Notes: a model not told the origin generated them from the sequence alone. DNA of 64,000 bases from Octopus bimaculoides (GCF_001194135.2 NC_068986.1:30869068-30933067); one strand, 5' to 3'. Counted from the first letter of the stretch, positions 3,488 to 63,227 are shown. A program made the numbers and translations.

Positions 3488-3592
3488 GTACAATACCACA
3501 TGGACTTTGAGAAAAACAAGGACAAGTACACAGTTGTAGCAGACAACCCTGATATGCAACGGTGTTTGATGGCTTCAAAGAATGCAAGTTTG
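3488..3592 (+). CDS. Lasp: Nebulin-repeat exon 1 (105 nt, phase 0-0): VQYHMDFEKNKDKYTVVADNPDMQRCLMASKNASL
   Basis: cttccag|GTACAA...AGTTTG|gtatga; open frame of exactly 35 codons with nebulin repeat pattern. Confidence 0.9.
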
Positions 3593-19892: not shown

Positions 19893-19997
19893 GTCAACTA
19901 CCACAGTGACTTTGAAAAACAAAAGGGTACTTACACTGCTGTAGCTGAACCTATTGAATTGAAACAACATTTGGAAAACACAAAGAACATGAGTTTG
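19893..19997 (+). CDS. Lasp: Nebulin-repeat exon 2 (105 nt): VNYHSDFEKQKGTYTAVAEPIELKQHLENTKNMSL
   Basis: cttgattag|GTCAAC...AGTTTG|gtataa; 35 codons, no stop. Confidence 0.9.
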
Positions 19998-20403: not shown

Positions 20404-20508
20404 GTAAACTACCACAGTGATTTTGAGAAACAGAAGGGTTCCTATACTGCTGTTGCAGAACCTATGGATGTAAAGCGACACTTGGAAAACACAAAAAACA
20501 TCAGTCTG
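20404..20508 (+). CDS. Lasp: Nebulin-repeat exon 3 (105 nt): VNYHSDFEKQKGSYTAVAEPMDVKRHLENTKNISL
   Basis: ccattaacag|GTAAAC...AGTCTG|gtatat; 35 codons. Confidence 0.9.
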
Positions 20509-21430: not shown

Positions 21431-21535
21431 GTAAACTACCACAGTGATTTTGAGAAACAGAAAGGTTGCTATACAATGGTTGCAGAACCTATGGATATAA
21501 AACAACATTTGGAAAACACCAAAAATATCAGTCTG
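21431..21535 (+). CDS. Lasp: Nebulin-repeat exon 4 (105 nt): VNYHSDFEKQKGCYTMVAEPMDIKQHLENTKNISL
   Basis: ccattgatag|GTAAAC...AGTCTG|gtatat; 35 codons. Confidence 0.9.
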
Positions 21536-23209
21536 GTATATTTAGTTGTGATGCATGGAAGGGTTGTTTGTTGCCATTTGGTGTTGACTAGTTTTCTGAA
21601 ATCCATTGATTCTGCTGCACAACAAATAATGAAAATATTAATCCCTTTTTTTTTTTTTTTTTTGGGGTGATATTTTTTTTATTGTGAAATTAATAAGAGC
21701 ATTATATATTTGACATGATTGTAGCATATTTAGTTTCAACTTTTAATATTTGGATAATATTCTTGAGTTTGGCTCCATTAGTAACAAAGATTTATATTCC
21801 TCATGTGATGTTAGGTGATGTAGAGTCAATTTTAAGAATATAAGGTTCTATCAAGACACAATGGAAATTTTAGAAAAACCATTTTCAATATTTTTTTTTT
21901 TTTGTAACACTTCATTTCAAAAATATTTTACTCTTAAAAATAGTGTTTGTTTTCTGACCCCAGTTTTTTTAAAAATCATAAGTGTGCCTGTTTCTGTTTT
22001 CTACTCTAAATTAACTAATATTTTTGAAAAATAGCTAGTCATCAGTGTTCATTTATTTTTAATAGTGTAAAATCTGAAAATTTTTCTCACTTGTTGGAAA
22101 AAAAAAAANNNNNNNNNNTTAAGGGCCGATTTTGAGTTGCTAAGTCATATTAAAAAACAAGTGAAAGAGAATTTAATTATAGATATTTAATACTTCATCT
22201 ATGATAAACAATAGTGTGATGTTTTGTAATTAGGGAGGGATCCATAAACAGGTGCCTTCAACACTATATACTACAATGAATTATGATGTTCTGATTTTTT
22301 TGAAAGATCTTAACATGGAGTTTGCATGCCAGGAATTGAAACTGGGAATCAAAATCACTTCTGTGGTGCTTACCTTTTATTTTATAGAAATATTTTCATT
22401 TTCAGTCACCACTTTTCATAATCTTTGAGCAATTTCTTTTGCATACCAACATTTTATAAGAATATTGCTATAAATTAACTCATAGCTCAACATGTTTTAA
22501 ACATTGTTATTTTACATTATCTATTGATGATGTTAGATGCTTTTCTCAGTATCATCTTATTTTTGTTTATATTATGCATATTACTGAAGAAGTGAATATA
22601 ATTTTAGGATGATATTGTACTAGTGCTTTAGGCCAGTTTGATTGAGCAAACCATGTCAATTGTTTCTTTTTTCATATATAGTATATCTGAAACCACATTA
22701 TTTAATGTGTTCTTTCTTTGACAGTAGGGCATGATTTGAGTGAGATTTAGCTGCTATTTTTAACATGTCAGGCAATCCTGTAGGCTCAAGTTGTAGTCAA
22801 GTATATCGACTGTGTTGACTCAATTATTGCTCCAATATATTGATTATGTGGGTGTAGGACAATGTAGTTATAGGTTGTATTTTGACCAGGAATTACACTT
22901 GTATTTATCCACAGGAACTGAATAATGTCCTAAAGTTGGACATAGGAAATGATTAGTGTTCCAAGATTAATGTAATAAATAAAATATTTATTCTCTTAAC
23001 TGCACAGAACCATAATTAGGAACTCCAGACAACTATGAAATCTATGATTATCTGTTTTTCTGTAAAGTTTTGTCTTACATTAGTTTTACTAATCTCACTA
23101 AATGTAGAAATAGGTTTTCTTTCCCCCTTTTTTTAATAACTTATTTCTAAAAAAATTTCTTCTTACAAATAAATGCACAACCTACTTACATGTGTGTATG
23201 TATGAATAT

Positions 23210-23357: not shown

Positions 23358-23867
23358 NNNNNNNNNNNNNNNNNNNNNNNNNNNNNNNNNNNNNNNNNNN
23401 NNNNNNNNNNNNNNNNNNNNNNNNNNNNNNNNNNNNNNNNNNNNNNNNNNNNNNNNNNNNNNNNNNNNNNNNNNNNNNNNNNNNNNNNNNNNNNNNNNNN
23501 NNNNNNNNNNNNNNNNNNNNNNNNNNNNNNNNNNNNNNNNNNNNNNNNNNNNNNNNNNNNNNNNNNNNNNNNNNNNNNNNNNNNNNNNNNNNNNNNNNNN
23601 NNNNNNNNNNNNNNNNNNNNNNNNNNNNNNNNNNNNNNNNNNNNNNNNNNNNNNNNNNNNNNNNNNNNNNNNNNNNNNNNNNNNNNNNNNNNNNNNNNNN
23701 NNNNNNNNNNNNNNNNNNNNNNNNNNNNNNNNNNNNNNNNNNNNNNNNNNNNNNNNNNNNNNNNNNNNNNNNNNNNNNNNNNNNNNNNNNNNNNNNNNNN
23801 NNNNNNNNNNNNNNNNNNNNNNNNNNNNNNNNNNNNNNNNNNNNNNNNNNNNNNNNNNNNNNNNNNN
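23358..23867. other. Assembly gap (N run) inside the repeat-exon array
   Basis: 510 N. Confidence 0.98.
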
Positions 23868-24169: not shown

Positions 24170-24274
24170 ATTCAGTACCACAGTGATTTCGAAAAGCAGA
24201 AAGGTAACGTCACACCCGTTGCTGACACTTTGGAAATGAAGCGTCATACAGAAAATGCAAAGAACATTAGTTTG
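24170..24274 (+). CDS. Lasp: Nebulin-repeat exon 5 (105 nt): IQYHSDFEKQKGNVTPVADTLEMKRHTENAKNISL
   Basis: ctatgacag|ATTCAG...AGTTTG|gtacaa; 35 codons. Confidence 0.9.
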
Positions 24275-25659: not shown

Positions 25660-25972
25660 NNNNNNNNNNNNNNNNNNNNNNNNNNNNNNNNNNNNNNNNN
25701 NNNNNNNNNNNNNNNNNNNNNNNNNNNNNNNNNNNNNNNNNNNNNNNNNNNNNNNNNNNNNNNNNNNNNNNNNNNNNNNNNNNNNNNNNNNNNNNNNNNN
25801 NNNNNNNNNNNNNNNNNNNNNNNNNNNNNNNNNNNNNNNNNNNNNNNNNNNNNNNNNNNNNNNNNNNNNNNNNNNNNNNNNNNNNNNNNNNNNNNNNNNN
25901 NNNNNNNNNNNNNNNNNNNNNNNNNNNNNNNNNNNNNNNNNNNNNNNNNNNNNNNNNNNNNNNNNNNNNNNN
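25660..25972. other. Assembly gap (N run) inside the repeat-exon array
   Basis: 313 N. Confidence 0.98.
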
Positions 25973-26204: not shown

Positions 26205-26312
26205 ATGCATTATCGAAGTGATTTTACTAAACTGAAAGGGACAGCCACTCAAGTGACTGTGGAGTCTCTTGAAATGAAAAGACATGCTGAAAATGCCAAG
26301 AACCTCAGTGCG
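26205..26312 (+). CDS. Lasp: Nebulin-repeat exon 6 (108 nt): MHYRSDFTKLKGTATQVTVESLEMKRHAENAKNLSA
   Basis: aacattcacag|ATGCAT...AGTGCG|gtacta; 36 codons, most divergent repeat. Confidence 0.85.
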
Positions 26313-29168: not shown

Positions 29169-29276
29169 ATTCAGTATCACAGTGACTTTGAAAAGCAGAA
29201 AGGGTCTGCAGCGAAATTGACAGCAGATTCTATGGAGATGAAGAGACATCTGGAAAATGCCAAGAATGCCAGCATG
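29169..29276 (+). CDS. Lasp: Nebulin-repeat exon 7 (108 nt): IQYHSDFEKQKGSAAKLTADSMEMKRHLENAKNASM
   Basis: gacttctgcag|ATTCAG...AGCATG|gtactg; 36 codons. Confidence 0.9.
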
Positions 29277-34441: not shown

Positions 34442-34616
34442 ATTAAATATCATGAAGATTTTGAGAAATCGAAAGGAAAATTCATCACCATTGCTGATGA
34501 TCCAGAATTGCAACGCATCAAGCAGAATACTCAGATTCAGAGTGAGATCAGCTATAAGGGTATCAAACAAACCCGGGATTTTATGGAACAACGACGACCA
34601 GATCAAGCTGCTCAGG
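34442..34616 (+). CDS. Lasp: Canonical Lasp-type repeat exon plus start of linker (175 nt, phase 0-1): IKYHEDFEKSKGKFITIADDPELQRIKQNTQIQSEISYKGIKQTRDFMEQRRPDQAAQ
   Basis: ttacctttcag|ATTAAA...CAGG|gtaaca; lies in ORF 34415..34678; resembles the Lasp repeat KYHEEFEK...VADTPELQRIK. Confidence 0.92.
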
Positions 34617-39660: not shown

Positions 39661-39867
39661 ATGGTCTTCCTCCTCCTCCTCCTATGTCTTCTACTACTAC
39701 TACTGCTGCAGCTGGTGGAGGTGGTAGTGGGGTCCCCACAATTGGCAGCATTGGGCGACCTGGTAGGATCAGTGACTACGACCCCTACCAAGAGAATTCA
39801 TCCTTCAACTCCCCATACTCTGCTAAGTCCCAGGCCACTACCATTTATGATTCTAGAATTGGACAAG
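39661..39867 (+). CDS. Lasp: Linker exon (207 nt, phase 1-1): DGLPPPPPMSSTTTTAAAGGGGSGVPTIGSIGRPGRISDYDPYQENSSFNSPYSAKSQATTIYDSRIGQ
   Basis: ctctttggtag|ATGG...CAAG|gtgagt; in frame with the phase-1 end of exon 34442; ORF 39645..39899. Confidence 0.85.
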
Positions 39868-42661: not shown

Positions 42662-42670
42662 AGGACCTGG
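42662..42670 (+). CDS. Lasp: Candidate 9-nt microexon (phase 1-1), encodes EDL
   Basis: tgtttttaaag|AGGACCTGG|gtaagt; consensus donor, frame-preserving. Confidence 0.55.
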
Positions 42671-42783
42671 GTAAGTAATAATTTTTTTCCCTTCCAAACT
42701 TTCATTGTTGGATATCATAATAGATTTCATCTGTCTTAAAATATCAGCTCATGTTTAATTATTTAGCTTTTTGGTTTTTTTAG

Positions 42784-42819
42784 TGGACAAATCCAAAAAT
42801 ACTTCAGCAGCTAAGACAG
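42784..42819 (+). CDS. Lasp: Candidate 36-nt mini-exon (phase 1-1): VDKSKNTSAAKT
   Basis: ttggtttttttag|TGGAC...GACAG|gttggt; open in linker frame. Confidence 0.62.
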
Positions 42820-43841
42820 GTTGGTTTAGCACATGCAGTCTGCCTCCTGGCTTCTTTTTTTCTCTCCCCACAAATGCTTAGCTAGCTCTTCAAATTGACT
42901 TTTGTAATAATGATTCACTGCATTTAGCAAATTTAATATTATATGTGATTAATTTCACTTGTTCAAGCTGTCAGTTTGACAAGAAGTTTTTAATGTTTAG
43001 GTGTAATAGTTTGCAGTACTTGATAAATTTAATCTAGTTCAAACTTCATTTTCACTTAGCACTGAATTTTTAAATTATATAGATTGAAAAAAAAATGTCT
43101 GATAGATTCCCAAATATGTTAGATACCTTTCTTTCCTTTTAATGTCATAATTATGTTTAAAATTATCATTAAAGCAAATATTTTTTCCTTGCAATCTGGC
43201 TGTTTTCACTAGTTGAGTAGTAATATTTCACTGGCACTTAAAAATCAAAAACTACTAAAGTAAATTCAATAATGAGGGACAGATATTACTTAGCATAGAA
43301 CTTTGCACATCCTATTCATTTCTGCTTTGTGATAATGGTGTGAGACATCTTTTGACAAACTGTTATAATAATACTTCATGTAGGTATATAATATCTGAAT
43401 CACAGATAAGGAACAAAAAAGCAAATATTTGTGCAAGTGGCCTTCTTGGCACCTTAAGAGGCCAACAACATCAAAGAGTTGAAAAATATTTTTGCTGAGA
43501 GAATGTTTGCATATGAAAGGTTTAGATCATATCTAAGTACGGATGTGGTCGATATCTGGCAAATTAATCATAGTTATTTCATAATCTGTTGCGAGAACAT
43601 TATTTTATGGTTTAACATTAGTAACGATGTAAATAAATTGGTTCACCAATGACTTTTTGTGCCAGAAAGTAAACAACTTTTTGAAGGAGAGAAGGATAAT
43701 ATTCTAATCTTCGTAGTATAAATAATTTGAATTGAATTTCAAACTAGTTTGGCCATGTCTGAAATTAGAATTATTTTATTTTTGTCATTCAAATGGCAGA
43801 AATGATAACCAGTGCTGGAATAAATGCTTTTTAGTCTTTAA

Positions 43842-44013
43842 CCCTTTAGCATTCAGATTTCATTGTCAAATGTAATGCAAGCTTCAAAATTTCAATGATG
43901 TAATGGTTTATTTTTAGAATGGCATTGTAAGGTAGGTATGAGGTTGGATCTAGCCAGTTTGAACACGAAACAGAATGTTCAGACCTCATATGGCCAGTTT
44001 AAATGTTAAAGGG
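43842..44013. mobile_element. TTAA-flanked MITE (family 2)
   Basis: TTAA|CCCTTTAGCATT...AATGTTAAAGGG|TTAA; 11/12 TIR match; right-end remnants also near 8230 and 35630. Confidence 0.8.
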
Positions 44014-44315
44014 TTAATGTTTTCTATGTTCAACATTCAAATCTTGCCACACATATTCAAGGTTGTAAGTATGTTCGGTTATGTATTGGAATCAATTCAA
44101 CTGATGATGGACTACACAAATTTATGGTGTGATTCCAATAATAGAAATCAATCGTGTTTGAAACCAATAATTAGTAATTAAAATCATTGACTTTAAGTAT
44201 ATGGGTAAATTAGTTAGAATTTTTTTTCTTTTATTTACATTGTAATCATGTATAAAATATTTGATCCATGTGATCCTGCTGATTTCATCCTTATTTTGAT
44301 TTGAACTGTTTCTAG

Positions 44316-44363
44316 TTGAAAAAGTAGCCAAAAGCAAAGAAAGTTCTAAGTCATCTAAGAAAG
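44316..44363 (+). CDS. Lasp: Candidate 48-nt mini-exon (phase 1-1): VEKVAKSKESSKSSKK
   Basis: gaactgtttctag|TTGAA...AGAAAG|gttggt; open in linker frame; flank homologous to that of 42784. Confidence 0.68.
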
Positions 44364-45047
44364 GTTGGTTAGCACTTGCACACTGCTGGGAAAACTGTGT
44401 TGTCTTGATTGCTGCTTCATGGCATTTTTCTGCTTCTGTTTAGACTTCCCGAACATTTCTCCCAGTAGCATAAAAGGAAACAAAAAAAAAAAAAAANNNN
44501 NNNNNNAAAAAAAAAAAAAAAAAAAGAAATTGTGTTGAATTAGTTGGTGTTAATATTTCACTAGTGGTATGCCCAATAGATTTTTGTGTAATAAACATGG
44601 TCACATGTATACATACATACATTCATTCATTCATACATATATATTCTGTATGTAAAAACCTTAGTTGACTCAAGTATCTGCCCCTCTCCCCCCAATATTT
44701 GTTGCTGCTGATGCTATTGTTCATTCAACTGCTTTCAAGTGAAATAGAAATAGATGTTAGATAATTAGAGAAATTAAATAACCCATTAGTTTTCTAGATT
44801 TCCCTCCGTTCATTAGCTGTTGTTGCTCTCTAATGTTTCTGATGTTTGGTAGCAGTTCAAATAATCATGTTTGTTTTTAGCTCTTAATGAATTTACTTTC
44901 ATTTTCAGAATGTGTGTGTGTATGTGTTTGTGTGCAATATATACACACATGATAAAATAATATATATATATATATTTGATTTTGAATGCTTTTTATTTTT
45001 ACCATTTACTATGTTTTTTTCATTTTTTTTTTTCTTGTGCTACCCAG

Positions 45048-45059
45048 TTAGATCTACAG
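45048..45059 (+). CDS. Lasp: Candidate 12-nt microexon (phase 1-1): VRST
   Basis: long U-rich tract, ttcttgTGCtacccag|TTAGATCTACAG|gttcgt. Confidence 0.58.
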
Positions 45060-45724
45060 GTTCGTGACTGTTCTTCCCTATGTATCATTTTTATTTTACT
45101 TCTCTTTTATATGAAATCTAATATTAAGTTCATATTACTAGGGGAAAAAAAGTAAATTTTTTTTTTCTTTTTAGAGAAATACAATAGATTGCTCTCATAC
45201 ACACACACACACATATACATGCACAAATTGTAGATGTTGATTAAAGATTGGTTTCTTTTGATTATTCTTAATTAATGTGATTATCATCTCAATTTCTTCT
45301 AATTATACTAACAGTACATTCTCTATAACAAAATTTACTTCTGTTTTTCATTGTTTTGAATATTGATTATTTTGAAATGTTTTTTTTTTAATTCTTTCAA
45401 ATATTGTTTTTACATGTGCAACAGTTTTAATATTATATATATTAATATATTTAATGAGTTCAAGATGTTAACTCTGATATTTCTCCAAGTGTCATTTGAA
45501 GGATACTGTTTGACAGTAATATAGCAGCCATATTGTTATTTTGTTGAAGCTGTTTATTAATGAGCATTATTAAAATGTTATCAATTATATATGCATAGAA
45601 ATGAAATGCCAAATGCATAGAGTGGGCTGTCATATAGACATAAACTAGTTTGAAAACTGGTTTTATTATCCAAATATATTAAATCGATGATAGTAGTTCT
45701 CTCTCTTCCTTTCTCTTTCTGTTT

Positions 45725-45769
<45 letters not shown>

Positions 45770-48325
45770 ATTTGTAAAGCTGAACTTGAGTTGTTTCTTT
45801 TTAAATCTTATAATGTGTTGTCTTGTATGTGTTTGCATGCTTGTTTTGTCATAATTTTTCTTTAGCCTAATTATGAATATTTGTCCACTGAAACCTTTTA
45901 TAATCACAAGCAGAATCTGCTAATTGGAGAATAACAGTTTTGATAAATTTTTGTACAAACTAATCCAAATAAATTAACTATTAATCTGCTGTTTGTAAAA
46001 TACATATTTTGTTTTAGTTGTTGTCATAGAAAAATTCTATAAAAGTAGATGTTCATAAGGACATTCTCGATCCTTTTATTAGTTATTCATTGACCAGTTA
46101 TTGTAAATGTTATTATCAATAGCATACTTCACAGTAAGTCTATTTTTATTGTTGTCCATTCAGTATATATATATGCGAAATATATATTTATATATGTCCA
46201 TATACATGTGTGTGCTGTCTGTGTTTATGTTGTTTCATTGTGTCCCTTACTCTGTACTCTCTTGCAAGTGAAGTCAAACCTGAACTGTAGCTATCATTAT
46301 AGCATATTCTAATTCAATGAAAGATTGAATACCTCTTTTATTTCTAATCTCTTCAATGTTTTATTGAATATTCTGGTTCAGTTTAGTTGTTATCATTGAG
46401 CAGGCTGTTTTCCAGTTTGTTATTGTGCAATTCAGGTGTGCTGTTCAATATTGTAAGCTAATTTTAGCCTAACCAGACCCCTGTATAGAAATGTTGTATG
46501 GCCTGGCTTTATATATTTTATTTTACCATGGCTTAGTATAATTTCAGTGAAGTTATTTGATGCTAGACATGGCATGAGCAGTTTGTGTTGTGGCCAGTTT
46601 TTGTTTGTATATTTATATGATGGTGTTTTTTTCTTTGTCTATTCAATAAGTTTCTTAAACTAGACTTCCAGACCTGTCCATTATCTGGAAGTAGTGGAAT
46701 AGTCTGCCAATCTTTCTGTTCATTGTTTGTTATTCATCAAGATTTTAAGTGAACTATATTTTGTGACATTTTGAAGGAATTGTTTAATTAATTCACCTTT
46801 AAAATGGATAGTATTGAGCTGTTGAATTTTGCTGTGAAGATATTTGACTGTAGTCAGGCCAAAATCATGTCAAGCCAAATTTCAAGATTTTTTTTTTTTT
46901 TTTTTTTGTGCATAAGATGAACATTTAATCAATGTTGAGCACTTGGTAGTAATTGTTAGTTTTACCCTAAAAGTTGTCCACTGGTAGTTATAGTGTAGTA
47001 ACCTTGTTAAAAATAATATAATTGTCCTGTGAGCATTCTAATATTTGACACTCAAACCTCATGTACTTACTGATACAGCACACCAAATGTATGTTTCTCA
47101 TTAAATTAGCTCCTGTAAATCACCAATTGCTGTCCCTCACTTTTTTATATTTAGGAAGAATTTGTTGATTTTATTAGAATTTCTGTTCCTTTGCCTTCAA
47201 GATTCAGCATAATCAACTGAATTATGTACTTCACTGCTTCACAAAGCAAATATGATGTTTCACAGTTATGTCACTGTTGATTGATTGTGTTAATTTACTC
47301 CTGTTGTTTAATTTCAATTTAAAATAGATTTAGATGTTCTTGTATCTATGAAAAATAAAATTTTTGTCGACTTGTATGTCAGAAACGCACAAAAAATTAA
47401 AGATTCTCTGCTCCCCCTTAAAGTTTTGTATAGTGTTATGTGTGTGTGTGTGTGTGTTTATATATATATATATAATCTTAATTTAAACATAAGAGTATTA
47501 TGTCAAATATATAGAAATATTTTCTGTATATATTTCTACTTCTTTTAAAAAAAACTAATTATCTAACAGACAAAAGGAACTTTCATTTCTTTCATAACCT
47601 AACTAATTAATCAGTCAGCCTATTTTAATTTATTTTGCTTTTCCTCATTCTATTAACATTACCAGTGTGTTTTACTAAATCGTTTACATTCTTTATCAGT
47701 TCTCTGATAGGAAGAAATAAATATCTTTGTTATAACTATCTTATTAAAAAAAGATATTAGAATTGGCAAGATGTATGAACTAGTCTAATTCTTGTTGTCT
47801 GTCTGTGCAGCTTTACTATCAAAATGGTATTGCACGATCTCTTGTTCCAATGAATGCATCTTTATTAATTTTGTTAAAAAAAGATTCATTTGGAACCAAC
47901 AGAATGTGTCAATTTGAGAAGTTCTCTGAACAGATTTACTTTGAAAACTTAAACTGATGACTAATTTGTCAGATTATTTTATGCAGTTATGTGTACATTT
48001 GTTAAATTAAATATTTTTTGCTGCTTATAATCAGAAATGGAACCCCTTCAAAAGTTTTCTATGTGTATACATTTGTCTCTCATCAGGGATATGAAATTGG
48101 AGTGCAGTTATAAACCATAATCTTTGTCGGCAGATTTGGCTAATGTTAAGCCTCAAAGAAAATAATTTGTGCAATAACTGTTAAAATCCACTTAATCAGT
48201 TTAATTCATTAATAATGGCCTTAGCTTTCTGCACACACCTTTTTAATTCTTTTTGTTTTAAATTGCTTGTTTGAGCTATAATCTGAAAGTGATAGGAAGA
48301 CAGTTCTCCCTACATGCATTTCTTT

Positions 48326-48338
48326 CATTCATTCTCTC

Positions 48339-48400
<62 letters not shown>
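48326..48400. repeat. (CT)n microsatellite
   Basis: Direct reading. Confidence 0.95.
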
Positions 48401-48405
<5 letters not shown>

Positions 48406-48726
48406 CACATATACACTAATATGTACCCACTCTCTCACATACTATATTTTCAGAGATTATCTGCTGTTAATAAATTTGATGCTAAATGATTTAGTCAATA
48501 TAGTTGACACTTGCTACATTATTAAAAGCTCAATGTAGTCTGAGGGAGAAACAATCTCTAATGAAAATCAAGGAGTTATTCATTACTCACTTTGTAAACA
48601 ATATTGTAAAAAAAAAAACAAGCGAACATTGAAAGTAAAAACTATATTAATATTAATTAACTAGATTTACTACATTAAGGTCTGTATTAATTTTACATTC
48701 CTAGTTCTATGCTGGATAAAACTATC

Positions 48727-48862
48727 GTGTGTGTGTGCGTGTGTGTGTGTGCGTGTGCGTGTGTGCGTGTGTGAGAGAGAGAGAGAGTGAGAGTGAGAGA
48801 GAGAGTGAGAGAGAGAGTGAGAGAGAGAGAGTGTGAGAGAGAGAGAGAGAGAGAGTGTGTGT
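48727..48862. repeat. (GT/GC)n + (GA)n compound microsatellite
   Basis: Direct reading. Confidence 0.95.
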
Positions 48863-48891
48863 GATCAAATGTCAATCTTCTATGATTTCAA

Positions 48892-49077
48892 GGTGGTGAG
48901 CTGGCAGTCCTATTAGTACACTGAGCTAAATGCTTAGCAGTATTTCATGAGTCTTTTCGTTCGTAGTTCAAATTCTGCCATGATAAAATAAGTCCCAATC
49001 GAACACTGGGGTTGATGTAATTGACTTATTGCCTCCCTCGAAATTGCTGGCCTTGTGCCAAAATTTGAAATTGATAT
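48892..49077 (+). mobile_element. SINE family C copy with internal deletion
   Basis: GGTGGTGAGCTGGCAG...AAATGCTTAGCAG...GTTCAAATTCTGCC...ACTGGGGTTGATGTAATTGAC. Confidence 0.75.
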
Positions 49078-49574
49078 TCTATGACTTTGATTGTCATTAC
49101 CTGAGTAAAACAGTGCTATGATGTTTGCATTGTTTGCTGGCATTATGATCTGTGATTCTGTGTGTTCAAAAAAAAAAAAGAAAAAAAGTGAAATCCTTAC
49201 TTGAGAAACAGATGAGTTAGCAACAAGAAGAGAATCTGACTGTAAAATGCTATCAATTTTCAACTCATTTAATTTATTAAAAGAGTCTATTTGAGTGTCA
49301 TTTTAGATATAAATTACAAGTAGTGACTTTATATTTAATGTTGGTTGCTAATCCAGCTTATGACACTAAAACCATTGTAACTCATAAACTCCCTAGCAAT
49401 TTAATCATGCTCGGTATCTGTGTTGGATTAGTAATTTAGAGTCAGGAATGTTTATCAATAAAATAAGTTTGCTGGCATTTTATCCTCACAACAATTATAA
49501 AGTTTCTAGAAAGTAGGATTTTATTATTTGTGTTTTGTGACAGATACACAAACTGTAGCAGTAGAAGAGAGCTC

Positions 49575-50318
49575 AGTTGAATATTTAACTGATCTTGACT
49601 TTGCTGATGATCTTGCTTTGATATCCCCTTGTATTAAAGATGCAGAATCTTTGTTACAAGCACCGGAGAAAGCACCAAACCAGGTTAGCCATTACTGCAA
49701 TGAGAGTAAGATAGAGTTTATCACGATCTCCTCCAAGTTAACTGAATTTAAATTGCTCAGTAATATATCCATCAAAAGCGTTGACGACTTAAAATGTCTT
49801 GGATCACATAAAGTAGACTCCCAAAAGGACTTTCGCATCCGCAAAGCTCTTGCTTGGGATGCATGTAACAGACTTGATAAGATCTGATACTCAAATCTTT
49901 CATCCATGTTAAAAGTTAAAATATTTAGAACACTAATTAAGCCAGTCCTTCGTTATGGATCAAAGACCTGGACCTTATCAGCTCTCTTAGAAAAACAACT
50001 AGATTGAACATATACCAACCTGCTCAGAAAGATACAGAATATCAGTTGGAATAACATCTATGGAAATCTGATACCAATATCCCTCGGGCTAAAACAGAAG
50101 TGCCTACAATCTGCTGGCCACTGTCATTGAGCAGAGAAAGAGGTTATCTCATCCCTGCTCCTATGGCATCCCTCTAGAAGTGTTTTCTCCAGGAAACTGA
50201 CATTTCCAGATGCTATATTTCTGGACTCAGGGCTGGATGTTAGAGATCTGAACACAGCAATGCAAGACCATGTAGTGTGGAAAGGGATTGTCAATGGAAT
50301 TCCAAAGGATGACGATGA
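49575..50318 (+). mobile_element. 5'-truncated RTE-clade LINE (RT motif FADD to C-terminus)
   Basis: YLTDLDFADDLALIS...RIRKALAWDACNRLDKI*...VKIFRTLIKPVLRYGSKTWTL; frame largely conserved with stops; GATGACGAT tail. Confidence 0.88.
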
Positions 50319-52217
50319 GAGGAAAGCTATTAAATATTACTGTTTGCTAGATGTTCAGAGCCATTGTGGCTATCACAGATTGAAAAATCTGAACAGGCCT
50401 GAACACATATCTTTTCCTGACTGAGAAAGTAAAACTGTTTTTCTTTTTGTTGTCTGTTCCAGTCTTTCTCCTTTTCACAAACTACATCTTACTTATGTAG
50501 ATAACTGATCTACAATTGGGTAGATGATGGATTTAATGTAGATAACTACAGAACTTCTGTAGCTTACATAGCAGTTAGCTGATCTATTTAGCTCTGGTTG
50601 TTTTTTGAAGCATCTGTTTTTGGCAAGTTAGCTTCTGCATAGTTACTACTACCTTTTAGAAGGAGAATCACCCATTAAAAAGCCGAAATGATATTAGGAC
50701 AACACATCCATGATAATGACAAGGCAACTTTGGTTTGACCTTTAATTTAACTAATAGTAGAACTGTTTGCTTAATGTTAACATATTTAATGTTGGAAACA
50801 TTAAAAAGCTAGCTAGAAATAATTATGTATAGAGTAAACAACAATTTTAGTCAATGGCTCGTAGTATTTTAATTTTGGCAAGTATGGGAAGTAACTCCAT
50901 ACATGTTTCAGTTTCATAATCTCATCAGTGACAGATTTTAACTATATTTGTTAAAGAATCACTAAGTAAACATACAAGATTGTCTACTGGTTAGTGTGGA
51001 AAAATAGAATTGTTTAGAGAATATACATAGAAGATTAAAAAGAAGCTGATAACATTACTTAGTAATAAATTCACAATTGCTAATAATAGATAAACCAAAC
51101 AGTTTAATTATGGCTTTTATTGTTATATTACATAAAACAGCGTGTGTGTTCATGTGCATGTGGGTTTGTATATGTGTTTATGTGTAATAGAAAATTCTGA
51201 AAGAGTTAAGAAACTTAAAAATTATAGGGTTTTGTTGTTACTAATTGTGAGAATATGGTGCTTATCTCTTTCAAACAATATAACTGATTATGAAATTCTC
51301 ACTATTCAGACAGGAACATAATATAAAACATGATTTGAACAAAAATCTTTAGCTTTATTATAGGTGAGGAAGAAAAGGTATGATATTATGAAAGGCAATT
51401 TCCTTAAATTGTAGTGTGTGTGTGTGTGTGTGTATGCACACACACACACACACACACACACAACTGCTCAATACGGCCTTGCATTCATACATTTATTATG
51501 CGTGAGATAAATGGGGTTTAGTCCTAAACCACAGTTTTGCTCGGTCAGCCTCTGGTTAATTGTACATGTTAGTGTATTGAAAGAAATGACCAAAGGACTG
51601 ATTGAATGAAACTATAGACTGGGAATGTAATTCCTGTTTGCTTCCCATATAAATAAACATGTGTGTGTAAACTAGCAATTACACAAGTTACACAATAATG
51701 TCAGAACGATGTTGTTTCATCACCTAGAAACTAACAAACTATTTTATTAATATTTTAGTCCCGTTACACTTGTATTTATTTTGCGAAGACATTCATCAAA
51801 GTAATTCTTGATTGTATGTTGGGCCTTGCTAACAGATTTTATTATGAAATTTTAACCACATGACTTTGTCATCCTACATCTCTAGCTTTTGTTGCTCTTT
51901 GTTGAACTTTACCACCGTGCATCAAGCAGTAACTTATGCATGACATCATACGCAGCACACTGCACAATCAGTAATAATCATCTCATCCTAGGTGTAGGGC
52001 AGGAGTGAGGGTAAGGCAGGTGGTCGGTGACACACTTGCTTCAAATTGATCTTGGATCTACTTTTATAGTTTCCCTGAAATGCTGCAACACTACTAATTC
52101 TAACCGATAAATCTAGGATAACCAATTTAGCATTTTAAAATACAACTAACCTGTTATGAAGTGATGCTACTTCAGCCAATTATTTCTTTCTTCTTACTTA
52201 ATTTATAACTTGCTTAG

Positions 52218-52250
52218 GAGGAAGATGGAAGAGTTCAGTATGTAACTCAA
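52218..52250 (+). CDS. Lasp: Candidate 33-nt mini-exon; GGRWKSSVCNS in linker phase 1 (EEDGRVQYVTQ in phase 0)
   Basis: ttcttacttaatttataactTGCttag|GAGGAA...ACTCAA|gtacgt; length divisible by 3. Confidence 0.45.
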
Positions 52251-53059
52251 GTACGTAATATATAGTAATGTCATCAATGAAGTATGATTCTCCTTATTCT
52301 TCATTCAAGAACCAACTTTTGATCTATTTGGCAATTATTATTCTGTATATTGCAATATAGATGTTTAGGTTAATGTAACCCTTTTTTTATACTAATCTAG
52401 TTAGCTTCACAACGTAGTATTAAGTGATATTGCTAAGTGTTTCTAGCAGTTATGACAGTTATATTCTGAAAGTGAACATCTGTGTTATTGTTATTGATTA
52501 ATTTGGACAAGTTACATATAAGAACTTAGACTGGTTTGGTGACAATAGAGGAAATACAGCTGCTGTTAGCTGGGAAATGACTTTTGTTTTAACAACGATA
52601 AATCCACATGAAAATAGAAATAAAGGAAATGTTGTCTGCCAGCTTGGTGTGAAATAGGCCAAGAAAGACTGTCACTCAGAAGATTTATGCTATCACAATA
52701 AACTGAGTGGGATGTGATGCTTTGATGACCACTGTGGCTTAAAAACCCAGACTAATTGACAAGGAGCAAAGTCAGAGATAAATTGCTCATTTATCTATGT
52801 AGAAGCTATAACTTGTCTGAGAGCAGCGCTACACTTGATATTCCTTCTAATGTCAAGGTTATCAATCAAGCTCCATTTCAGGGTCAGGTGTCATTCCCAT
52901 TGCAATCTGTGAAGAAGAAAAAAAAAAAAAATTTTAATAAAAACAGGAGATAATATGCTGTAGATGTTGCTAATTTATTTATTGTTGCTAATTTATTTCT
53001 TCTCTGCTTTATAGTCACAAAGAATTGTCTCACAAGATAAAGTGTCTATATAGTTTTCT

Positions 53060-53155
53060 TGAACAAGTGCAGAGGAAATTGCCTATCTTATGACAGACTC
53101 AAAGGAATTTGCCTTTTGTCTGTTGCTGCCAAAACACTTGCCTGCATTATTGTCT
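53060..53155 (+). mobile_element. Short LINE RT N-terminal remnant
   Basis: GNCLSYDRLKGICLLSVAAKTLACII resembles CxNYRGISLLSVAGKILARII. Confidence 0.5.
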
Positions 53156-53650
53156 CTTCAAACCTAGAGACTGCAATGTGTTTGCTGCAAGACAACTATT
53201 ATACACATAACAAGTATTCCTTTAGTGACTTAAAAGCCTTGCAAATTATTTGGCACAGACAACTGTAAAATTAAGGTTAAGTTTGGTTACTCAGAAAAAT
53301 GCATTGCTTTTGTTATAATTAATGTTATAACAGTATGAGTCGCCAAATGTCTTTGCCCTAAATTTAGTCACTCAGGTTTTTAAAATTCTCGTTACAGTTT
53401 GGATGTTTTCTTTGGTATTATAGCAAGTGTACTTGAGAGAAAAAAAGAACAAAACTGCAAAACCTTAGTGCAAGAACTTGTGTGGATATATTTCTTACTG
53501 CTCCTGATAAAACCAGCAACAAAATGAGTGTTGTAAAAATTGAAGTCACATTCCAGCCTGTTCATAGAAAACAGTCTCAGAAAATCAAAGGACAGAGCTT
53601 GGAAACAGTAGAGACTTCTTTTATTTATCTTGCCTGTATTTTCTCAATAG

Positions 53651-53653
53651 CTT
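53651..53653 (+). CDS. Lasp: Candidate 3-nt microexon (CTT)
   Basis: cttcttttatttatctTGCctgtattttctcaatag|CTT|gtgagt; long pyrimidine tract and consensus donor 3 nt apart. Confidence 0.42.
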
Positions 53654-54493: not shown

Positions 54494-54530
54494 ATATATA
54501 TATATATATATATATATAGATATAGATATA
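54465..54530. repeat. (TATC)n + (TA)n microsatellite
   Basis: Direct reading. Confidence 0.9.
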
Positions 54531-54689
54531 GGTGCAGGAGTGGCTGTATGGTAAGAAGCTTGCTTCTCCTCACATGGTTCTGGGTTCAGTCCCACTGTGT
54601 GGAATCTTGGGCAAGTGTCTTCTATTATGACTTCAGGCTGACCAAAGCCTTATGAGTGGATTTGGCAGATGGAAACTGAAAGAAGCCTG

Positions 54690-54922: not shown

Positions 54923-56227
54923 TATAAAAAAAGAGTAAAAGAATTTATATAATAGATCACTTAAAGCTGGAAATATGACAAACAGAACTTCTGGAGTTGT
55001 TGAAGTTCAATTTTTAATCAGAAATGGTCAGTGCAAGAAGTATTTAAGTACTGTACTGGGTGTGTGCCAATCTTGAATGAACTGGCTCTAGTTTTAAGTC
55101 TTGCATCTGCCAATGCCAAAGCAACTTTTTAAAATCTAATTCATATATTCACGGCCTCTGTAATAGAAAAGCTAAAGGAATCACTGTTCTCAATTTGAAA
55201 TTCATGTAGGGTATCTGATATTGTGGAGAGAGACGTGAAACATTTCAGAGTTAAGTATGTTGCCTGTTTCCTCATTGGTTAATATTTTTAGAGTGACTAT
55301 AAATTACATTTTGCAGCAATCTGCATTGAATCAAGGATTTTTTTAATATGAAAAGAAAGAAATCAATAAGAAACCCAAATAAAACCAAGGGCACTTATTA
55401 TTTTATATATATATATCTTAACTTTTTTTTTTAAGGTTTACAATCTTTATGTAACTTTATTTCTGGTGAAATCTACTGTCTTTGTTTTAAGAAAAATTTT
55501 TTAATGAGGAATTTAGTAAAATAGCTGGTTATCTGAAACATAAACAAACAAGGCATTTTGATGGAATAAAAGAAGTTTGCATGATAGAACCAGGTGTGGT
55601 CTCAGGCATGTTGGTATCAAAAGGGTTAATGGTCTTAATCTAAACGTGCATGTAATGTAAGAAGAGACATTTTTCTCAGCCATTTTCTAGTTATTGACTT
55701 GTAAAAAATGGTCTTTTAACCTGAGGCTGAAAATAAATTCTCATAAAACTGCAGTTATAAGTTTCAAGTTAACTTTAACAATGTGTTGCACATTATGATT
55801 TATATAACTTTACTTAAAATGTGTTAAACTATTGAAATAGTCTGTTCAAGTATTCTAGGATTTTAGCATTAATTTTTCTTAGATATAAAATAATTCAGTT
55901 TTTCTGTACCTCAATCATCAAATACCTAATTTAAAAAAAAAAAAATTTTGTTTTAATTTGTTTGTTGTTTTTACTCCCCTCCCCATGCACTCAATCCTCC
56001 TTCACCACAAAACTCACTTGTTTGTTGGTTTATCCTCAGTGTTATATCACAGCAATAAACTTTAATATATTGTTTTTGTTGTTTTTGTTCCACACATTTT
56101 AAAGAATTTTGATTGTGAATCATTAATGAATGAAAAAACTAAAAACTGCTGCTTTAACATCTCTCTACTGAGCAGCTTGAGGTTGGCTTGGCTTGATTTT
56201 TGCTTGATTACTGCATTTCTCTTCCAG

Positions 56228-56341
56228 TTGAGAATGGTTCTTCTCGTCGCATTGGATCAATTGCTGATTATGACCCTATGAATAACCAATATGGCTCCCT
56301 TGTAGCAGACCAGGAGCAGACAGGTAGAGTGTATGATCCAG
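56228..56341 (+). CDS. Lasp: Linker exon (96 or 114 nt, phase 1-1): VENGSSRRIGSIADYDPMNNQYGSLVADQEQT(GRVYDP)
   Basis: catttctcttccag|TTGAG; two in-phase donors, ACAG|gtagag (end 56323) and CCAG|gtacca (end 56341); second DYDP motif. Confidence 0.82.
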
Positions 56342-61360: not shown

Positions 61361-61398
61361 CTCCTGCACACCCACAGAATCCGTATGCTGGAAAAGGG
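61361..61398 (+). CDS. Lasp: Pre-SH3 linker exon (38 nt, phase 1-0): APAHPQNPYAGKG
   Basis: ttcctccttgtttttcaatttttag|CTCCTG...AAAGGG|gtaagt; ends in AGKG, resembling the residues just before Lasp/nebulin SH3 domains (recalled). Confidence 0.75.
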
Positions 61399-61744: not shown

Positions 61745-62359
61745 CAGTGGTTTCTCAACCAGGGTCCACATAAGATTTTGTTAAAATTTATGTGCAATAA
61801 AGTTAGTTACACTTCCACAACACAAAATATTTCTCCCTCAGGAGTGGCTGTGTGGTAAGTAGCTTGCTTACCAACCACATGGTGCCAGGTTCAGTCCCAC
61901 TGCGTGGCACCTTGGGCAAGTGCCTTCTACTATAGACTCGGGCCGACCAAAGCCTTGTGAGTGGATTTGGTAGACGGAAACTGAAAGAAGCCAGTCGTAT
62001 ATATGTGTGTATATATAATATGTTTGTGTGTCTGTTTGTCCCCCAACTTCGCTTGACAACCGATGCTGGTGTGTTTACGTCCCCCTAACTTAGCCGTTCG
62101 GCAGAAATAGACCAATAGGATAAGTACTAGGCTTGCAAAGAATAAGTCCTGGGGTCGATTTTCTCGACCAAAGGTGGTGCTCCAGCATAGCCGCAGTCAA
62201 ATGACTGAAACAAGTAAAAGAATATATAATTCTTAATAATATTTAATTATAAAGATATAATAAAAGATTTTTTAAACCTGGAATGGTTATGAATGTCCAC
62301 CTGGGTAAAGTAGGAATCAAAGGAGCCTACAGGTAAAAAAAAATGGTTGAGAATCACTG
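61745..62359. mobile_element. hAT-type MITE with nested SINE
   Basis: CAGTGGTTTCTCAACCA...TGGTTGAGAATCACTG inverted termini; degraded 8-bp flanks CCACAGAG / CTATAGAT. Confidence 0.7.
61839..62222 (+). mobile_element. Full-length SINE family A
   Basis: CAGGAGTGGCTGTGTGGTAAG...GGTTCAGTCCCACTGCG...GACTGAAACAAGTAAAAG; CpG-rich, inserted inside the hAT MITE. Confidence 0.88.
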
Positions 62360-62947: not shown

Positions 62948-63227
62948 NNNNNNNNNNNNNNNNNNNNNNNNNNNNNNNNNNNNNNNNNNNNNNNNNNNNN
63001 NNNNNNNNNNNNNNNNNNNNNNNNNNNNNNNNNNNNNNNNNNNNNNNNNNNNNNNNNNNNNNNNNNNNNNNNNNNNNNNNNNNNNNNNNNNNNNNNNNNN
63101 NNNNNNNNNNNNNNNNNNNNNNNNNNNNNNNNNNNNNNNNNNNNNNNNNNNNNNNNNNNNNNNNNNNNNNNNNNNNNNNNNNNNNNNNNNNNNNNNNNNN
63201 NNNNNNNNNNNNNNNNNNNNNNNNNNN
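62948..63227. other. Assembly gap (N run)
   Basis: 280 N; smaller gaps at 2013-2026, 22109-22118 and 44497-44506. Confidence 0.98.

What the first reader, a model, noticed from the sequence alone, without database searches (positions are those of the whole stretch)
42662..53653. Cluster of frame-preserving microexons (9, 36, 48, 12, 33, 3 nt) in the Lasp linker
Seen: in the 16-kb intron between two phase-1 exons, six short segments have a pyrimidine tract/AG and a GT donor, and all have lengths divisible by 3. Including all six gives an open frame: RIGQ-EDL-VDKSKNTSAAKT-VEKVAKSKESSKSSKK-VRST-GGRWKSSVCNS-TF-ENGSSRRIGSIADYDP. Three have a TGC just upstream of the 3' splice site. Established: UGC motifs there mediate eMIC/Srrm3/4 neural microexon inclusion in bilaterians. 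Inference: combinatorial, probably neural, tuning of the spacing and charge between the two DYDP motifs. Caveat: I picked candidates partly on frame, so some may be chance.
Basis: partly seen in the sequence, partly recalled or inferred. Interest (0 to 1): 0.8.

Follow-up and report, generated by a model that had tools for sequence, protein, structure and literature searches.

The report
Three real Lasp microexons, three chance
Three of the six proposed tiny exons in this octopus Lasp/nebulette gene (36, 48 and 12 nt) are real, alternatively used exons already annotated in two sister octopus species. The other three (9, 33 and 3 nt) look no better than chance matches.

Summary
All six segments exist as described: AG acceptor, GT donor, lengths divisible by 3, and an open frame when all are chained. 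That pattern alone is not beyond chance. With thresholds set at the weakest candidate, the intron has 8-9 such open phase-1 segments. The antisense strand has 5, other introns have similar numbers per kb, and 3n lengths are not enriched (13/9/15).

Independent evidence divides the six.
- **Supported:** e36 (42784-42819, VDKSKNTSAAKT), e48 (44316-44363, VEKVAKSKESSKSSKK) and e12 (45048-45059, VRST). All three occur in Octopus sinensis RefSeq isoforms and in transcript-based O. vulgaris models.
- **Combinatorial use:** 16 different combinations appear, and the two flanking DYDP exons are themselves optional.
- **Deeper conservation:** a cuttlefish-like transcript carries homologous Lys/Ser-rich cassettes.
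- **Origin:** e36 and e48 look like an old tandem exon duplication that still shares its donor and a 24-nt intronic block.
- **Unsupported:** e9, e33 and e3 appear in none of 279 proteins retrieved.

The assembly gap (44497-44506) lies in the intron between e48 and e12 and does not affect the frame.

Neural, eMIC-type regulation was not tested. Only e12 has that sequence architecture. The real exons are already in public annotation.

The parts
34442..34616 (+). Last nebulin-repeat exon (IKYHEDF...RRPDQAAQ + G). It ends in phase 1, is present in every retrieved isoform, and serves as upstream splice partner for all linker modules.
   Evidence: 97% identical to O. sinensis; Nebulin Pfam repeats.
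39661..39867 (+). Module A: 207-nt phase 1-1 cassette exon carrying the first DYDP motif (DGLPPPPP...ISDYDP...DSRIGQ). It is skipped in many isoforms.
   Evidence: skipped in P0004, P0153 and X17-X27.
42662..42670 (+). e9 candidate (AGGACCTGG, EDL): unsupported and probably chance.
   Evidence: The sites exist, but the 3' splice site is only at the 71st percentile of intronic AGs. It is absent from all 279 retrieved proteins. The background gives about 5 such segments per strand.
42784..42819 (+). e36: real 36-nt phase 1-1 cassette microexon (VDKSKNTSAAKT).
   Evidence: 100% identical peptide at exact AG/GT boundaries in O. sinensis X17, X19, X23, X26, X27, X28 and in O. vulgaris P0004. Paralogous to e48.
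42820..42845 (+). Weak donor GUUGGU plus a conserved downstream intronic block (GUUGGUUUAGCACAUGCAGUCUGC) shared with e48.
   Evidence: Unique in the window. No significant RNA structure.
44316..44363 (+). e48: real 48-nt phase 1-1 cassette microexon (VEKVAKSKESSKSSKK).
   Evidence: 15/16 residues identical to O. sinensis X17, X19, X21, X22, X26, X27, X28 and O. vulgaris P0004 and P0273. AG exclusion zone of 96 nt.
44364..44388 (+). Weak donor GUUGGU plus the conserved downstream intronic block (GUUGGUUAGCACUUGCACACUGC), the paralogue of the block after e36.
44497..44506 (.). Assembly gap (10 N) inside a poly-A run, in the intron between e48 and e12. It has no bearing on the frame.
   Evidence: Orthologous isoforms join e48 directly to e12.
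45048..45059 (+). e12: real 12-nt phase 1-1 cassette microexon (TTAGATCTACAG, VRST), with eMIC-like acceptor architecture.
   Evidence: VRST sits at this junction in O. sinensis X17, X21, X24, X26, X28 and O. vulgaris P0159 and P0160. It is the only AG-N12-GT in the window that encodes VRST. The 3' splice site is at the 99.6th percentile. AG exclusion zone 137 nt, UGC at -10.
52218..52250 (+). e33 candidate (GGRWKSSVCNS): unsupported and probably chance.
   Evidence: The sites exist. It is absent from all retrieved isoforms, although 33 nt is easily annotated. It ends in A (CAA|gtacgt), unlike every validated module.
53651..53653 (+). e3 candidate (CTT): unsupported and probably chance.
   Evidence: The sites exist. 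A second, equally good 3-nt candidate lies at 48893-48895. No isoform has the predicted ..TF-ENG junction.
56228..56341 (+). Module B: 114-nt phase 1-1 cassette exon carrying the second DYDP motif (VENGSSRRIGSIADYDP...VYDP). It is skipped in several isoforms.
   Evidence: skipped in P0004, P0160, P0161, X26 and X27.
61361..61398 (+). Exon C: 38-nt exon (APAHPQNPYAGKG), phase 1 to phase 0. It is present in every full-length octopus isoform and is the downstream splice partner for all linker modules.

Best explanation
**The gene.** The window holds the middle of an octopus Lasp/nebulette-type gene: a LIM domain, nebulin repeats, a linker and an SH3 domain.

**The modular linker.** Five consecutive cassette exons lie between the last nebulin-repeat exon (34442-34616) and the 38-nt exon 61361-61398. 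All five begin and end in phase 1.
- A: 207 nt, first DYDP motif.
- e36.
- e48.
- e12.
- B: 114 nt, second DYDP motif.

All five exons, and the upstream constitutive exon, end in G. Any subset can therefore be spliced together without breaking the frame.

**The real microexons.** e36, e48 and e12 are included or skipped independently.
- Together they add 0 to 32 residues of Lys/Ser/Thr-rich, positively charged sequence to the disordered linker between the actin-binding repeats and the SH3 domain.
- e36 and e48 look like an ancient tandem duplication of one cassette. They keep the same reading frame, the same weak GUUGGU donor and a shared 24-nt intronic block, which is probably a common splicing-regulatory element.

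**The false candidates.** The 9-, 33- and 3-nt segments are most likely chance AG...GT pairs.

**Shown and inferred.** Shown: that the three exons exist, are conserved and are used combinatorially in relatives. Inferred: their effect on linker charge and phosphorylation, the role of the intronic block, and any tissue specificity.
For: **Exons present in relatives.**
- The exhaustive representative search found O. vulgaris CAI9724167.1 (P0004), which reads ...DQAAQ-VDKSKNTSAAKT-VEKVAKGKESSKSSKK-APAHH....
- and the cluster listing gave 10 O. sinensis RefSeq isoforms and about 12 O. vulgaris models.
- The module table shows 16 different combinations of A, e36, e48, e12 and B. Among them is X28 (XP_036359953.1) with RIGQ-VDKSKNTSAAKT-VEKVAKGKESSKSSKK-VRST-VENGSS.

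**Transcript support.** O. vulgaris alternative forms were added by PASA from Iso-Seq and RNA-seq assemblies (PMC10700109).

**Mapping to the window.** The peptides land on exact AG/GT boundaries, in the right order and on the right strand.

**Conservation.**
- Only 1 of 32 residues differs between the window and O. sinensis.
- Intron DNA of another octopod is only 85.7% identical to the window.
- Neutral simulation gives P of about 0.004 at 10% divergence and 0.00015 at 14.3%.

**Deeper homology.** An intronless cuttlefish-like transcript (L002) has QAAQ-ADKSKVASSPSPKK-AESPKETRTASTK-APAGG at the same position.

**Duplication of e36 and e48.**
- blastn gives 75% identity over 65 nt, confined to the exon 3' half, the donor and about 24 intronic nt.
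- The exonic indel is 3 nt and both copies are read in the same frame.
- The pair ranks 19th of 23,476 donor-context pairs. The five highest-scoring pairs inspected are SINEs, microsatellites and a dispersed repeat.
- There is no third copy.

**Chance background for the other three.**
Against: - There is no transcript evidence from the window's own species, and no genomic DNA of any relative could be fetched. Conservation of e9, e33 and e3 was therefore never tested directly.
- RefSeq 'X' isoforms are computational combinations of supported junctions. The number of real full-length combinations is unknown.
- Only isoforms X17, X19 and X21-X28 of O. sinensis were retrieved. X1-X16, X18 and X20 were not seen and could contain other exons.
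- Exons of 3 and 9 nt are routinely missed by standard aligners and annotation pipelines. Their absence from annotation is weak evidence against e3 and e9.
- The functional reading (charge, phosphorylation, spacing) is inference only.
Confidence: 0.85

Rival explanations
1. All six segments are real microexons. The 9-, 33- and 3-nt exons are simply missing from annotation because they are tiny or rarely used.
For: - All six have AG/GT sites and donor scores at or above the 96th percentile of intronic GTs.
- Aligners often miss exons of 3-9 nt.
- A cuttlefish-like transcript does carry a 9-nt microexon (AGACCACAG, ETT) right after RIGQ, so very small exons exist at this junction in cephalopods.
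Against: - The background yields about 5 equally good open phase-1 segments per strand per 16 kb. Once the three validated exons are removed, 6 remain on the + strand.
- A 33-nt exon would normally be annotated, yet it is in none of the roughly 22 octopus isoforms.
- e33 and e3 end in A and T, unlike all validated modules, which end in G.
- The acceptors of e9 and e33 are mediocre, at the 71st and 82nd percentiles.
- The e33 peptide (GGRWKSSVCNS, with Trp and Cys) is unlike the Lys/Ser-rich real cassettes.
Confidence: 0.05
2. e12, and possibly e48, is a neuron-specific microexon dependent on the eMIC domain of Srrm3/4 (Srrm234).
For: - e12 has a 137-nt AG exclusion zone (above the 99th percentile of AG spacing in this intron), 86% pyrimidines at -25..-4, and UGC at -10.
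- e48 has a 96-nt AG exclusion zone.
- These are the features reported for eMIC-dependent exons in flies and mammals (PMC8797185).
Against: - No tissue data were available.
- e36 has none of these features, and the UGC of e48 is at -39.
- One UGC in a 15-nt window is expected about 11% of the time at this base composition (my estimate).
- The acceptor of e12 is strong rather than weak.
- Lasp is a broadly expressed cytoskeletal gene with strong muscle roles (from memory).
Confidence: 0.25
3. The Lys/Ser-rich cassettes e36 and e48 are regulated with the muscle-type, nebulin-repeat-rich (nebulette-like) isoforms rather than neurally. In those forms they partly replace the DYDP modules as an alternative linker.
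For: - In the retrieved O. sinensis models, e36 and e48 occur mostly in isoforms with 7 nebulin repeats that lack module A (X17-X27).
- The cuttlefish-like transcript L002 combines 5 nebulin repeats with the Lys/Ser cassettes and lacks both DYDP modules.
Against: - X28 and O. vulgaris P0273 combine short Lasp-type forms and module A with e36 and/or e48.
- RefSeq combinations are computational.
- No tissue information was available.
Confidence: 0.3
4. The three 'validated' exons are annotation artefacts carried from one annotation to the next, and are not truly expressed.
For: O. vulgaris product names were copied from O. sinensis by similarity search, and protein evidence from other cephalopods was used in that annotation.
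Against: - O. vulgaris alternative forms come from PASA transcript assemblies.
- An independent Logan RNA assembly from a cuttlefish-like species carries homologous cassettes in an intronless contig.
- The peptides are conserved far beyond neutral expectation.
- Paralogous conservation is restricted to the exon and donor region.
Confidence: 0.03

Closest known systems
Octopus sinensis RefSeq isoforms of 'LIM and SH3 domain protein F42H10.3 / Nebulette' (X17-X28, e.g. XP_036359953.1, XP_036359944.1) and O. vulgaris models CAI9724167-76
   Same: This is the same gene. The exon order matches, and the 36-, 48- and 12-nt exon peptides are the same (32 residues, 1 substitution). The optional DYDP exons match too.
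   Different: The window comes from another octopus species, with a few substitutions per exon. No transcript evidence for that species was available here.
Vertebrate NEBL locus (nebulette and LASP2 isoforms) and LASP1
   Same: The architecture is the same: LIM, nebulin repeats, linker and SH3 (Pfam). Nebulin-repeat cassette exons and alternative linker exons generate short Lasp-type and longer nebulette-type products. From memory, the LASP1 linker carries regulatory phosphosites (Ser146, Tyr171).
   Different: The linker sequence is not alignable to vertebrates. The Lys/Ser-rich microexon cassettes and the DYDP modules were found only in cephalopods (DYDP more widely in invertebrates). Here a single gene does both jobs.
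eMIC (Srrm3/4, Srrm234)-dependent neural microexons
   Same: The exons are short, frame-preserving cassettes in a disordered region. e12 has a long AG exclusion zone, a long pyrimidine tract and a UGC close to the 3' splice site.
   Different: Neural specificity and Srrm dependence were not tested. e36 lacks the architecture. e36 and e48 have an unusual shared donor-proximal intronic block instead.
Tandemly duplicated cassette exons with conserved flanking intronic elements
   Same: e36 and e48 are paralogous in the same frame, and similarity is confined to the exon 3' half, the donor and about 24 nt of intron.
   Different: They are not mutually exclusive, since both are included in many isoforms. 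No competing RNA-pairing 'docking' site was found.

Membership tests
Alternative frame-preserving cassette microexon (51 nt or less) | Length of 51 nt or less and divisible by 3, with canonical AG/GT boundaries | tested here: met
   All six candidates meet this. On its own it does not exceed chance.
Alternative frame-preserving cassette microexon (51 nt or less) | Both inclusion and skipping are seen in expressed or annotated isoforms | tested here: met
   Met for e36, e48 and e12 in O. sinensis and O. vulgaris isoforms, with PASA transcript-based forms in O. vulgaris. Not met for e9, e33 and e3, which appear in 0 of 279 proteins. Not tested in the window's own species.
Alternative frame-preserving cassette microexon (51 nt or less) | Conservation above the neutral intron background in related species | tested here: met
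   For e36, e48 and e12 there is 1 amino-acid change in 32 codons, against 7-10 expected neutrally. A homologous cassette occurs in a cuttlefish-like transcript. e9, e33 and e3 could not be tested because no relative's intron DNA was obtainable.
eMIC / Srrm3/4-dependent neural microexon | UGC motif close to the 3' splice site, a long AG exclusion zone and a long pyrimidine tract | tested here: inconclusive
   - e12: met (AG exclusion zone 137 nt, UGC at -10, pyrimidines 0.86).
- e48: partly met (AG exclusion zone 96 nt, UGC at -39).
- e36: not met (AG exclusion zone 15 nt, no UGC).

Values are; the feature list is from PMC8797185.
eMIC / Srrm3/4-dependent neural microexon | Neuron-enriched inclusion | not testable with these tools
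   No tissue-resolved RNA-seq was available. The run accessions of the Logan contigs are not mentioned in the searchable literature.
eMIC / Srrm3/4-dependent neural microexon | Inclusion depends on the eMIC domain of Srrm234 | not testable with these tools
   This needs knock-down or ectopic-expression experiments.
Lasp / nebulette family (LIM-nebulin-SH3) | Nebulin repeats followed by a linker, with an N-terminal LIM domain and a C-terminal SH3 domain | tested here: met
   The spliced window exons give 7 Nebulin Pfam repeats (E = 8.6e-46). The orthologue P0155, whose exons map onto the window at 86-100% identity, has LIM, Nebulin and SH3 domains. The LIM and SH3 exons themselves lie outside the window.
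Mutually exclusive tandem-duplicated exons (docking/selector RNA pairing) | Only one duplicate is included per transcript, and selector sequences share a complementary docking site | tested here: not met
   e36 and e48 are co-included in X17, X19, X26, X27, X28 and P0004. The best duplex partners of the two conserved blocks differ.

The most novel reading that the evidence does not exclude
The 12-nt exon e12 (VRST) would be a neuron-specific, Srrm234/eMIC-dependent microexon in a lophotrochozoan cytoskeletal adaptor. It might be homologous to the 9-nt ETT microexon of cuttlefish. At least one of the ultra-short candidates (e9 or e3) would also be real but invisible to standard annotation. That would make the cephalopod Lasp linker a dense, tissue-programmed microexon cluster.
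Probability: 0.15. Interest if true: 0.5.

Novelty: already known. Interest (0 to 1): 0.3.

Why it matters
This is a useful calibration case. A reader working from raw sequence alone recovered three genuine microexons as short as 12 nt. Frame preservation plus AG/GT was not enough, though, and half of the calls are probably false.

Biologically, the locus shows a very modular design. Five consecutive phase-1 cassettes, plus an upstream array of 105-108-nt nebulin-repeat cassettes, let one cephalopod gene produce Lasp-like and nebulette-like proteins with linkers of different length and charge.

The exons are already in public annotation, so the discovery value is modest. The open questions are tissue regulation and the factor that binds the conserved block after the e36 and e48 donors.

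Tried and rejected
1. **First protein search.** A search with the all-six linker peptide returned only a genomic intron-read-through ORF and a cuttlefish Lasp with the direct junction. It missed close homologues that later found, so its negative result is not informative.
2. **ORF bait search.** I concatenated 18 intronic ORF translations around the six candidates to fish for Logan genomic contigs of related octopods. Nothing came back.
3. **Genomic DNA of relatives.** None could be fetched.
   - The cuttlefish and Argonauta genes span more than 100 kb, so no DNA was returned.
   - The O. vulgaris and O. sinensis isoforms are not on record as the longest product.
   - Conservation of e9, e33 and e3 could therefore not be tested.
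4. **Third paralogue of e36/e48.** An nhmmer profile search of the window found none.
5. **Transposon origin of e36/e48.** Rejected: the block is unique in the window, although an unrelated repeat shares an 11-nt GGTTGGTTT core.
6. **Docking/selector RNA pairing for mutually exclusive splicing.** The best duplex partners differ for the two blocks, and the exons are co-included anyway.
7. **Local RNA structure around the two donors.** Not significant (z = +1.2 and +0.7).
8. **Rbfox GCAUG in the conserved block.** Absent on direct reading.
9. **Literature.**
   - No paper on cephalopod Lasp splicing.
   - A 2026 preprint covers O. bimaculoides tissue-specific splicing but does not mention Lasp, and no supplements are held.
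   - The SRR accessions were not found in any paper.

Full report
**1. What is in the sequence**

- Exon 39661-39867 ends ...DSRIGQ plus one G, with donor gtgagt.
- Exon 56228-56341 begins TT GAG AAT...
- Joining them directly gives RIGQ-V-ENGSSRRIGSIADYDP in frame. Cuttlefish Lasp has the same junction.
- The intron between them is 16,360 nt.

All six candidate segments are present, each with AG before and GT after:

| Name | Coordinates | Length |
|---|---|---|
| e9 | 42662-42670 | 9 nt |
| e36 | 42784-42819 | 36 nt |
| e48 | 44316-44363 | 48 nt |
| e12 | 45048-45059 | 12 nt |
| e33 | 52218-52250 | 33 nt |
| e3 | 53651-53653 | 3 nt |

The flagged assembly gap (44497-44506) sits inside a poly-A run, 134 nt after e48 and 541 nt before e12. 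It is therefore intronic. Orthologous proteins join the e48 peptide directly to the e12 peptide. The gap affects neither the frame nor the exon content.

**2. Is the pattern more than chance? No.**

I scored every AG and GT with generic splice-site matrices. The matrices are approximate and from memory, so I used them only for ranking within this window.
- Candidate donors rank at the 96th-99th percentile of intronic GTs.
- Candidate acceptors range from the 71st percentile (e9) to the 99.6th (e12).

I then set thresholds at the weakest candidate.
- The intron's + strand has 37 AG..GT pairs of 51 nt or less.
- Their lengths fall 13/9/15 into the three residue classes, so 3n lengths are not enriched.
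- Eight pairs are open in phase 1, or nine with e48, which fell just under the donor cut-off.
- The antisense strand, which cannot encode this gene, gives 5. Another 16-kb intron gives 5 on each strand.

Six frame-preserving candidates is about the number expected from sequence composition.

**3. Outside evidence divides the six**

An exhaustive HMMER search with the spliced window product found O. vulgaris CAI9724167.1 (P0004). It reads ...EQRRPDQAAQ-VDKSKNTSAAKT-VEKVAKGKESSKSSKK-APAHHQNPYAGKG...

Searching with that protein and listing cluster members produced 10 O. sinensis RefSeq isoforms (X17, X19, X21-X28) and about a dozen O. vulgaris models.

In the module table, A is 39661-39867, B is 56228-56341 and C is 61361-61398. 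The combinations seen are:
- A+e36+e48+e12+B (X28, XP_036359953.1, exactly RIGQ-VDKSKNTSAAKT-VEKVAKGKESSKSSKK-VRST-VENGSS)
- e36+e48+e12+B
- e36+e48+B
- e48+e12+B
- e48+B
- e36+B
- e12+B
- B alone
- e36+e48+e12
- e36+e48
- A+e12+B
- A+e48+B
- A+B
- A+e12
- A alone
- none

The peptides map to the window at the exact AG/GT boundaries. The only AG-N12-GT in the whole window that encodes VRST is e12.

The O. vulgaris alternative forms were added by PASA from Iso-Seq and RNA-seq assemblies (PMC10700109). They are therefore transcript-based.

None of the 279 proteins fetched contains the junction peptides of e9 (EDL after GQ), e33 (GGRWKSSVCNS) or e3 (TF-ENG).

**4. Conservation**
- Across e36, e48 and e12, one residue in 32 differs between the window and O. 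sinensis.
- Intron DNA of another octopod (Logan contig L001) is only 85.7% identical to the window.
- Under neutral substitution, one change or fewer with no stop has P = 0.004 at 10% divergence and 0.00015 at 14.3%.

There is deeper conservation too.
- An intronless 1,339-nt RNA-derived Logan contig from a cuttlefish-like species (L002) has QAAQ-ADKSKVASSPSPKK-AESPKETRTASTK-APAGG at the same position. Its two parts start like e36 (xDKSK) and e48 (xE..K).
- A second such transcript (L003) has a 9-nt insert, AGACCACAG (ETT), after RIGQ. Its 3' half resembles e12 (..CTACAG). Nine bases are too few to assign homology to e12 or e9.

**5. e36 and e48 are paralogues**
- Similarity runs over 42782-42843 and 44323-44386 (75% over 65 nt).
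- It covers the 3' two-thirds of e36, the matching part of e48, the identical weak donor GUUGGU, and about 24 nt of intron (UUAGCACNUGCANNCUGC). It then disappears.
- The one exonic indel is 3 nt, and both copies are read in the same frame: V-D-K-S-K-N-T-S-.-A-A-K-T against V-A-K-S-K-E-S-S-K-S-S-K-K.
- Among 23,476 pairs of good donors in the window, this pair ranks 19th. The five highest-scoring pairs, which I inspected, are SINEs, microsatellites and a dispersed repeat.
- There is no third copy.
- Similarity confined to the exon plus a donor-proximal block is what selection on a duplicated, regulated cassette would leave.
- I found no RNA structure, no shared complementary site and no Rbfox motif. 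What reads the block is unknown.

**6. How it most likely works**

The window encodes seven nebulin repeats and the linker of a LIM-nebulin-SH3 protein. Five cassettes lie between constitutive exon 34442-34616 and constitutive exon 61361-61398: A, e36, e48, e12 and B.
- All five are phase 1-1.
- All five, and the upstream constitutive exon, end in G.
- Every subset therefore keeps the frame and gives a Val, Asp or Ala junction codon.

Effect of including each microexon (direct count):

| Exon | Residues added | Net charge |
|---|---|---|
| e36 | 12 | +2 |
| e48 | 16 | +4 |
| e12 | 4 | +1 |

Together they add 10 Ser/Thr.

My inference is that they tune the length, charge and phosphorylation potential of the disordered linker between the actin-binding repeats and the SH3 domain. 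This would parallel the regulatory phosphosites in the vertebrate LASP1 linker, which I recall from memory and did not test.

Both DYDP exons are optional, and many isoforms carry the microexons without one or both of them.

**7. Neural, eMIC-type regulation**

Reported features of eMIC-dependent exons are a long AG exclusion zone, a UGC close to the 3' splice site and a long pyrimidine tract (PMC8797185). Measured values:

| Exon | AG exclusion zone | UGC position | Other |
|---|---|---|---|
| e12 | 137 nt (above the 99th percentile of AG spacing here) | -10 | 86% pyrimidines |
| e48 | 96 nt | -39 | |
| e36 | 15 nt | none | |

e12 is therefore a reasonable eMIC-type candidate. Nothing about tissue or factor dependence could be tested.

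**8. The three unsupported candidates**
- e33 is large enough to be annotated, yet it is absent from every retrieved isoform. It ends in A, and it encodes a Trp- and Cys-containing peptide unlike the real cassettes.
- e3 ends in T, and an equally good 3-nt rival lies at 48893.
- e9 has a mediocre acceptor.
- After the three validated exons are removed, six open phase-1 candidates remain on the + strand, against about five expected.
- Caveats: I could not obtain any relative's intron DNA. Exons of 3-9 nt are easily missed by annotation. Isoforms X1-X16, X18 and X20 were not retrieved.
- I put each at roughly 5-10% likely to be real.

**9. Novelty and verdict**

The real exons are already in RefSeq (O. 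sinensis) and ENA (O. vulgaris) annotation. I found no paper that discusses them. Novelty is low. The remaining open points are tissue regulation, especially of e12, and the conserved donor-proximal block of e36 and e48.

Noticed in passing
window 3488-3592, 19893-19997, 20404-20508, 21431-21535, 24170-24274, ~26205-26309, 29169-29276: An array of 105-108-nt phase-0 exons, each encoding one nebulin repeat. Three of them (19893, 20404, 21431) are recent tandem duplicates, 83-89% identical at protein level. Different O. sinensis and O. vulgaris isoforms use different subsets, so the repeat number is also set by splicing.
   Followed up: partly
window 42820-42845 and 44364-44388: A conserved intronic block of about 24 nt directly after the identical weak donors (GUUGGU) of e36 and e48. 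No RNA structure, docking site or known motif was found, so its reader is unknown.
   Followed up: yes
L003 (Logan SRR8281662) CDS, junction after RIGQ: A cuttlefish-like transcript carries a 9-nt insert, AGACCACAG (ETT), between the first DYDP exon and the APAGG exon. It may be the decapodiform counterpart of e12 (TTAGATCTACAG), but it is too short to decide.
   Followed up: partly
L002 (Logan SRR9970006) nt 916-996: A cuttlefish-like intronless transcript has 81 nt of Lys/Ser/Pro-rich cassette (ADKSKVASSPSPKK-AESPKETRTASTK) in place of both DYDP exons. It is probably two exons, of 42 and 39 nt, homologous to e36 and e48.
   Followed up: partly
window 61361-61398: A 38-nt exon (APAHPQNPYAGKG), phase 1 to phase 0, is present in every full-length octopus isoform retrieved. 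It is a constitutive exon of microexon size.
   Followed up: partly
window ~54520-54590 and ~61820-61890 (+); reverse-complement positions ~2130 and ~9428: Copies of a tRNA-like SINE (..GGAGTGGCTGTGTGGTAAGTAGCTTGCTTACC.. / ..GGGACTGAACC..) contain strong-looking GT donors. They top the list of similar donor contexts and are a source of false exon candidates.
   Followed up: no
window 11798, 31859, ~55606-55656: A second dispersed repeat has the core GGTTGGTWTCARAAGGGTTAA. One copy generates a spurious 51-nt AG..GT candidate inside the intron.
   Followed up: no
window 2013-2026, 22109-22118, 23358-23867, 25660-25972, 62948-63227: Five further assembly gaps. The one at 25660-25972 lies just upstream of the nebulin-repeat exon at about 26205.
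   Followed up: no
P0001, P0008, P0022, P0275 (database proteins): Several database 'proteins' are ORFs that read from a Lasp exon into the following intron, for example RIGQGESGNQTFIS. They come from genomic Logan contigs or intron-retaining models and can look like novel isoforms.
   Followed up: yes
tool behaviour: The word-indexed protein search with the linker query returned 2 hits. It missed more than 10 octopus isoforms with over 90% identity to the same exons, which a later query found. Negative results from that tool are weak evidence.
   Followed up: yes
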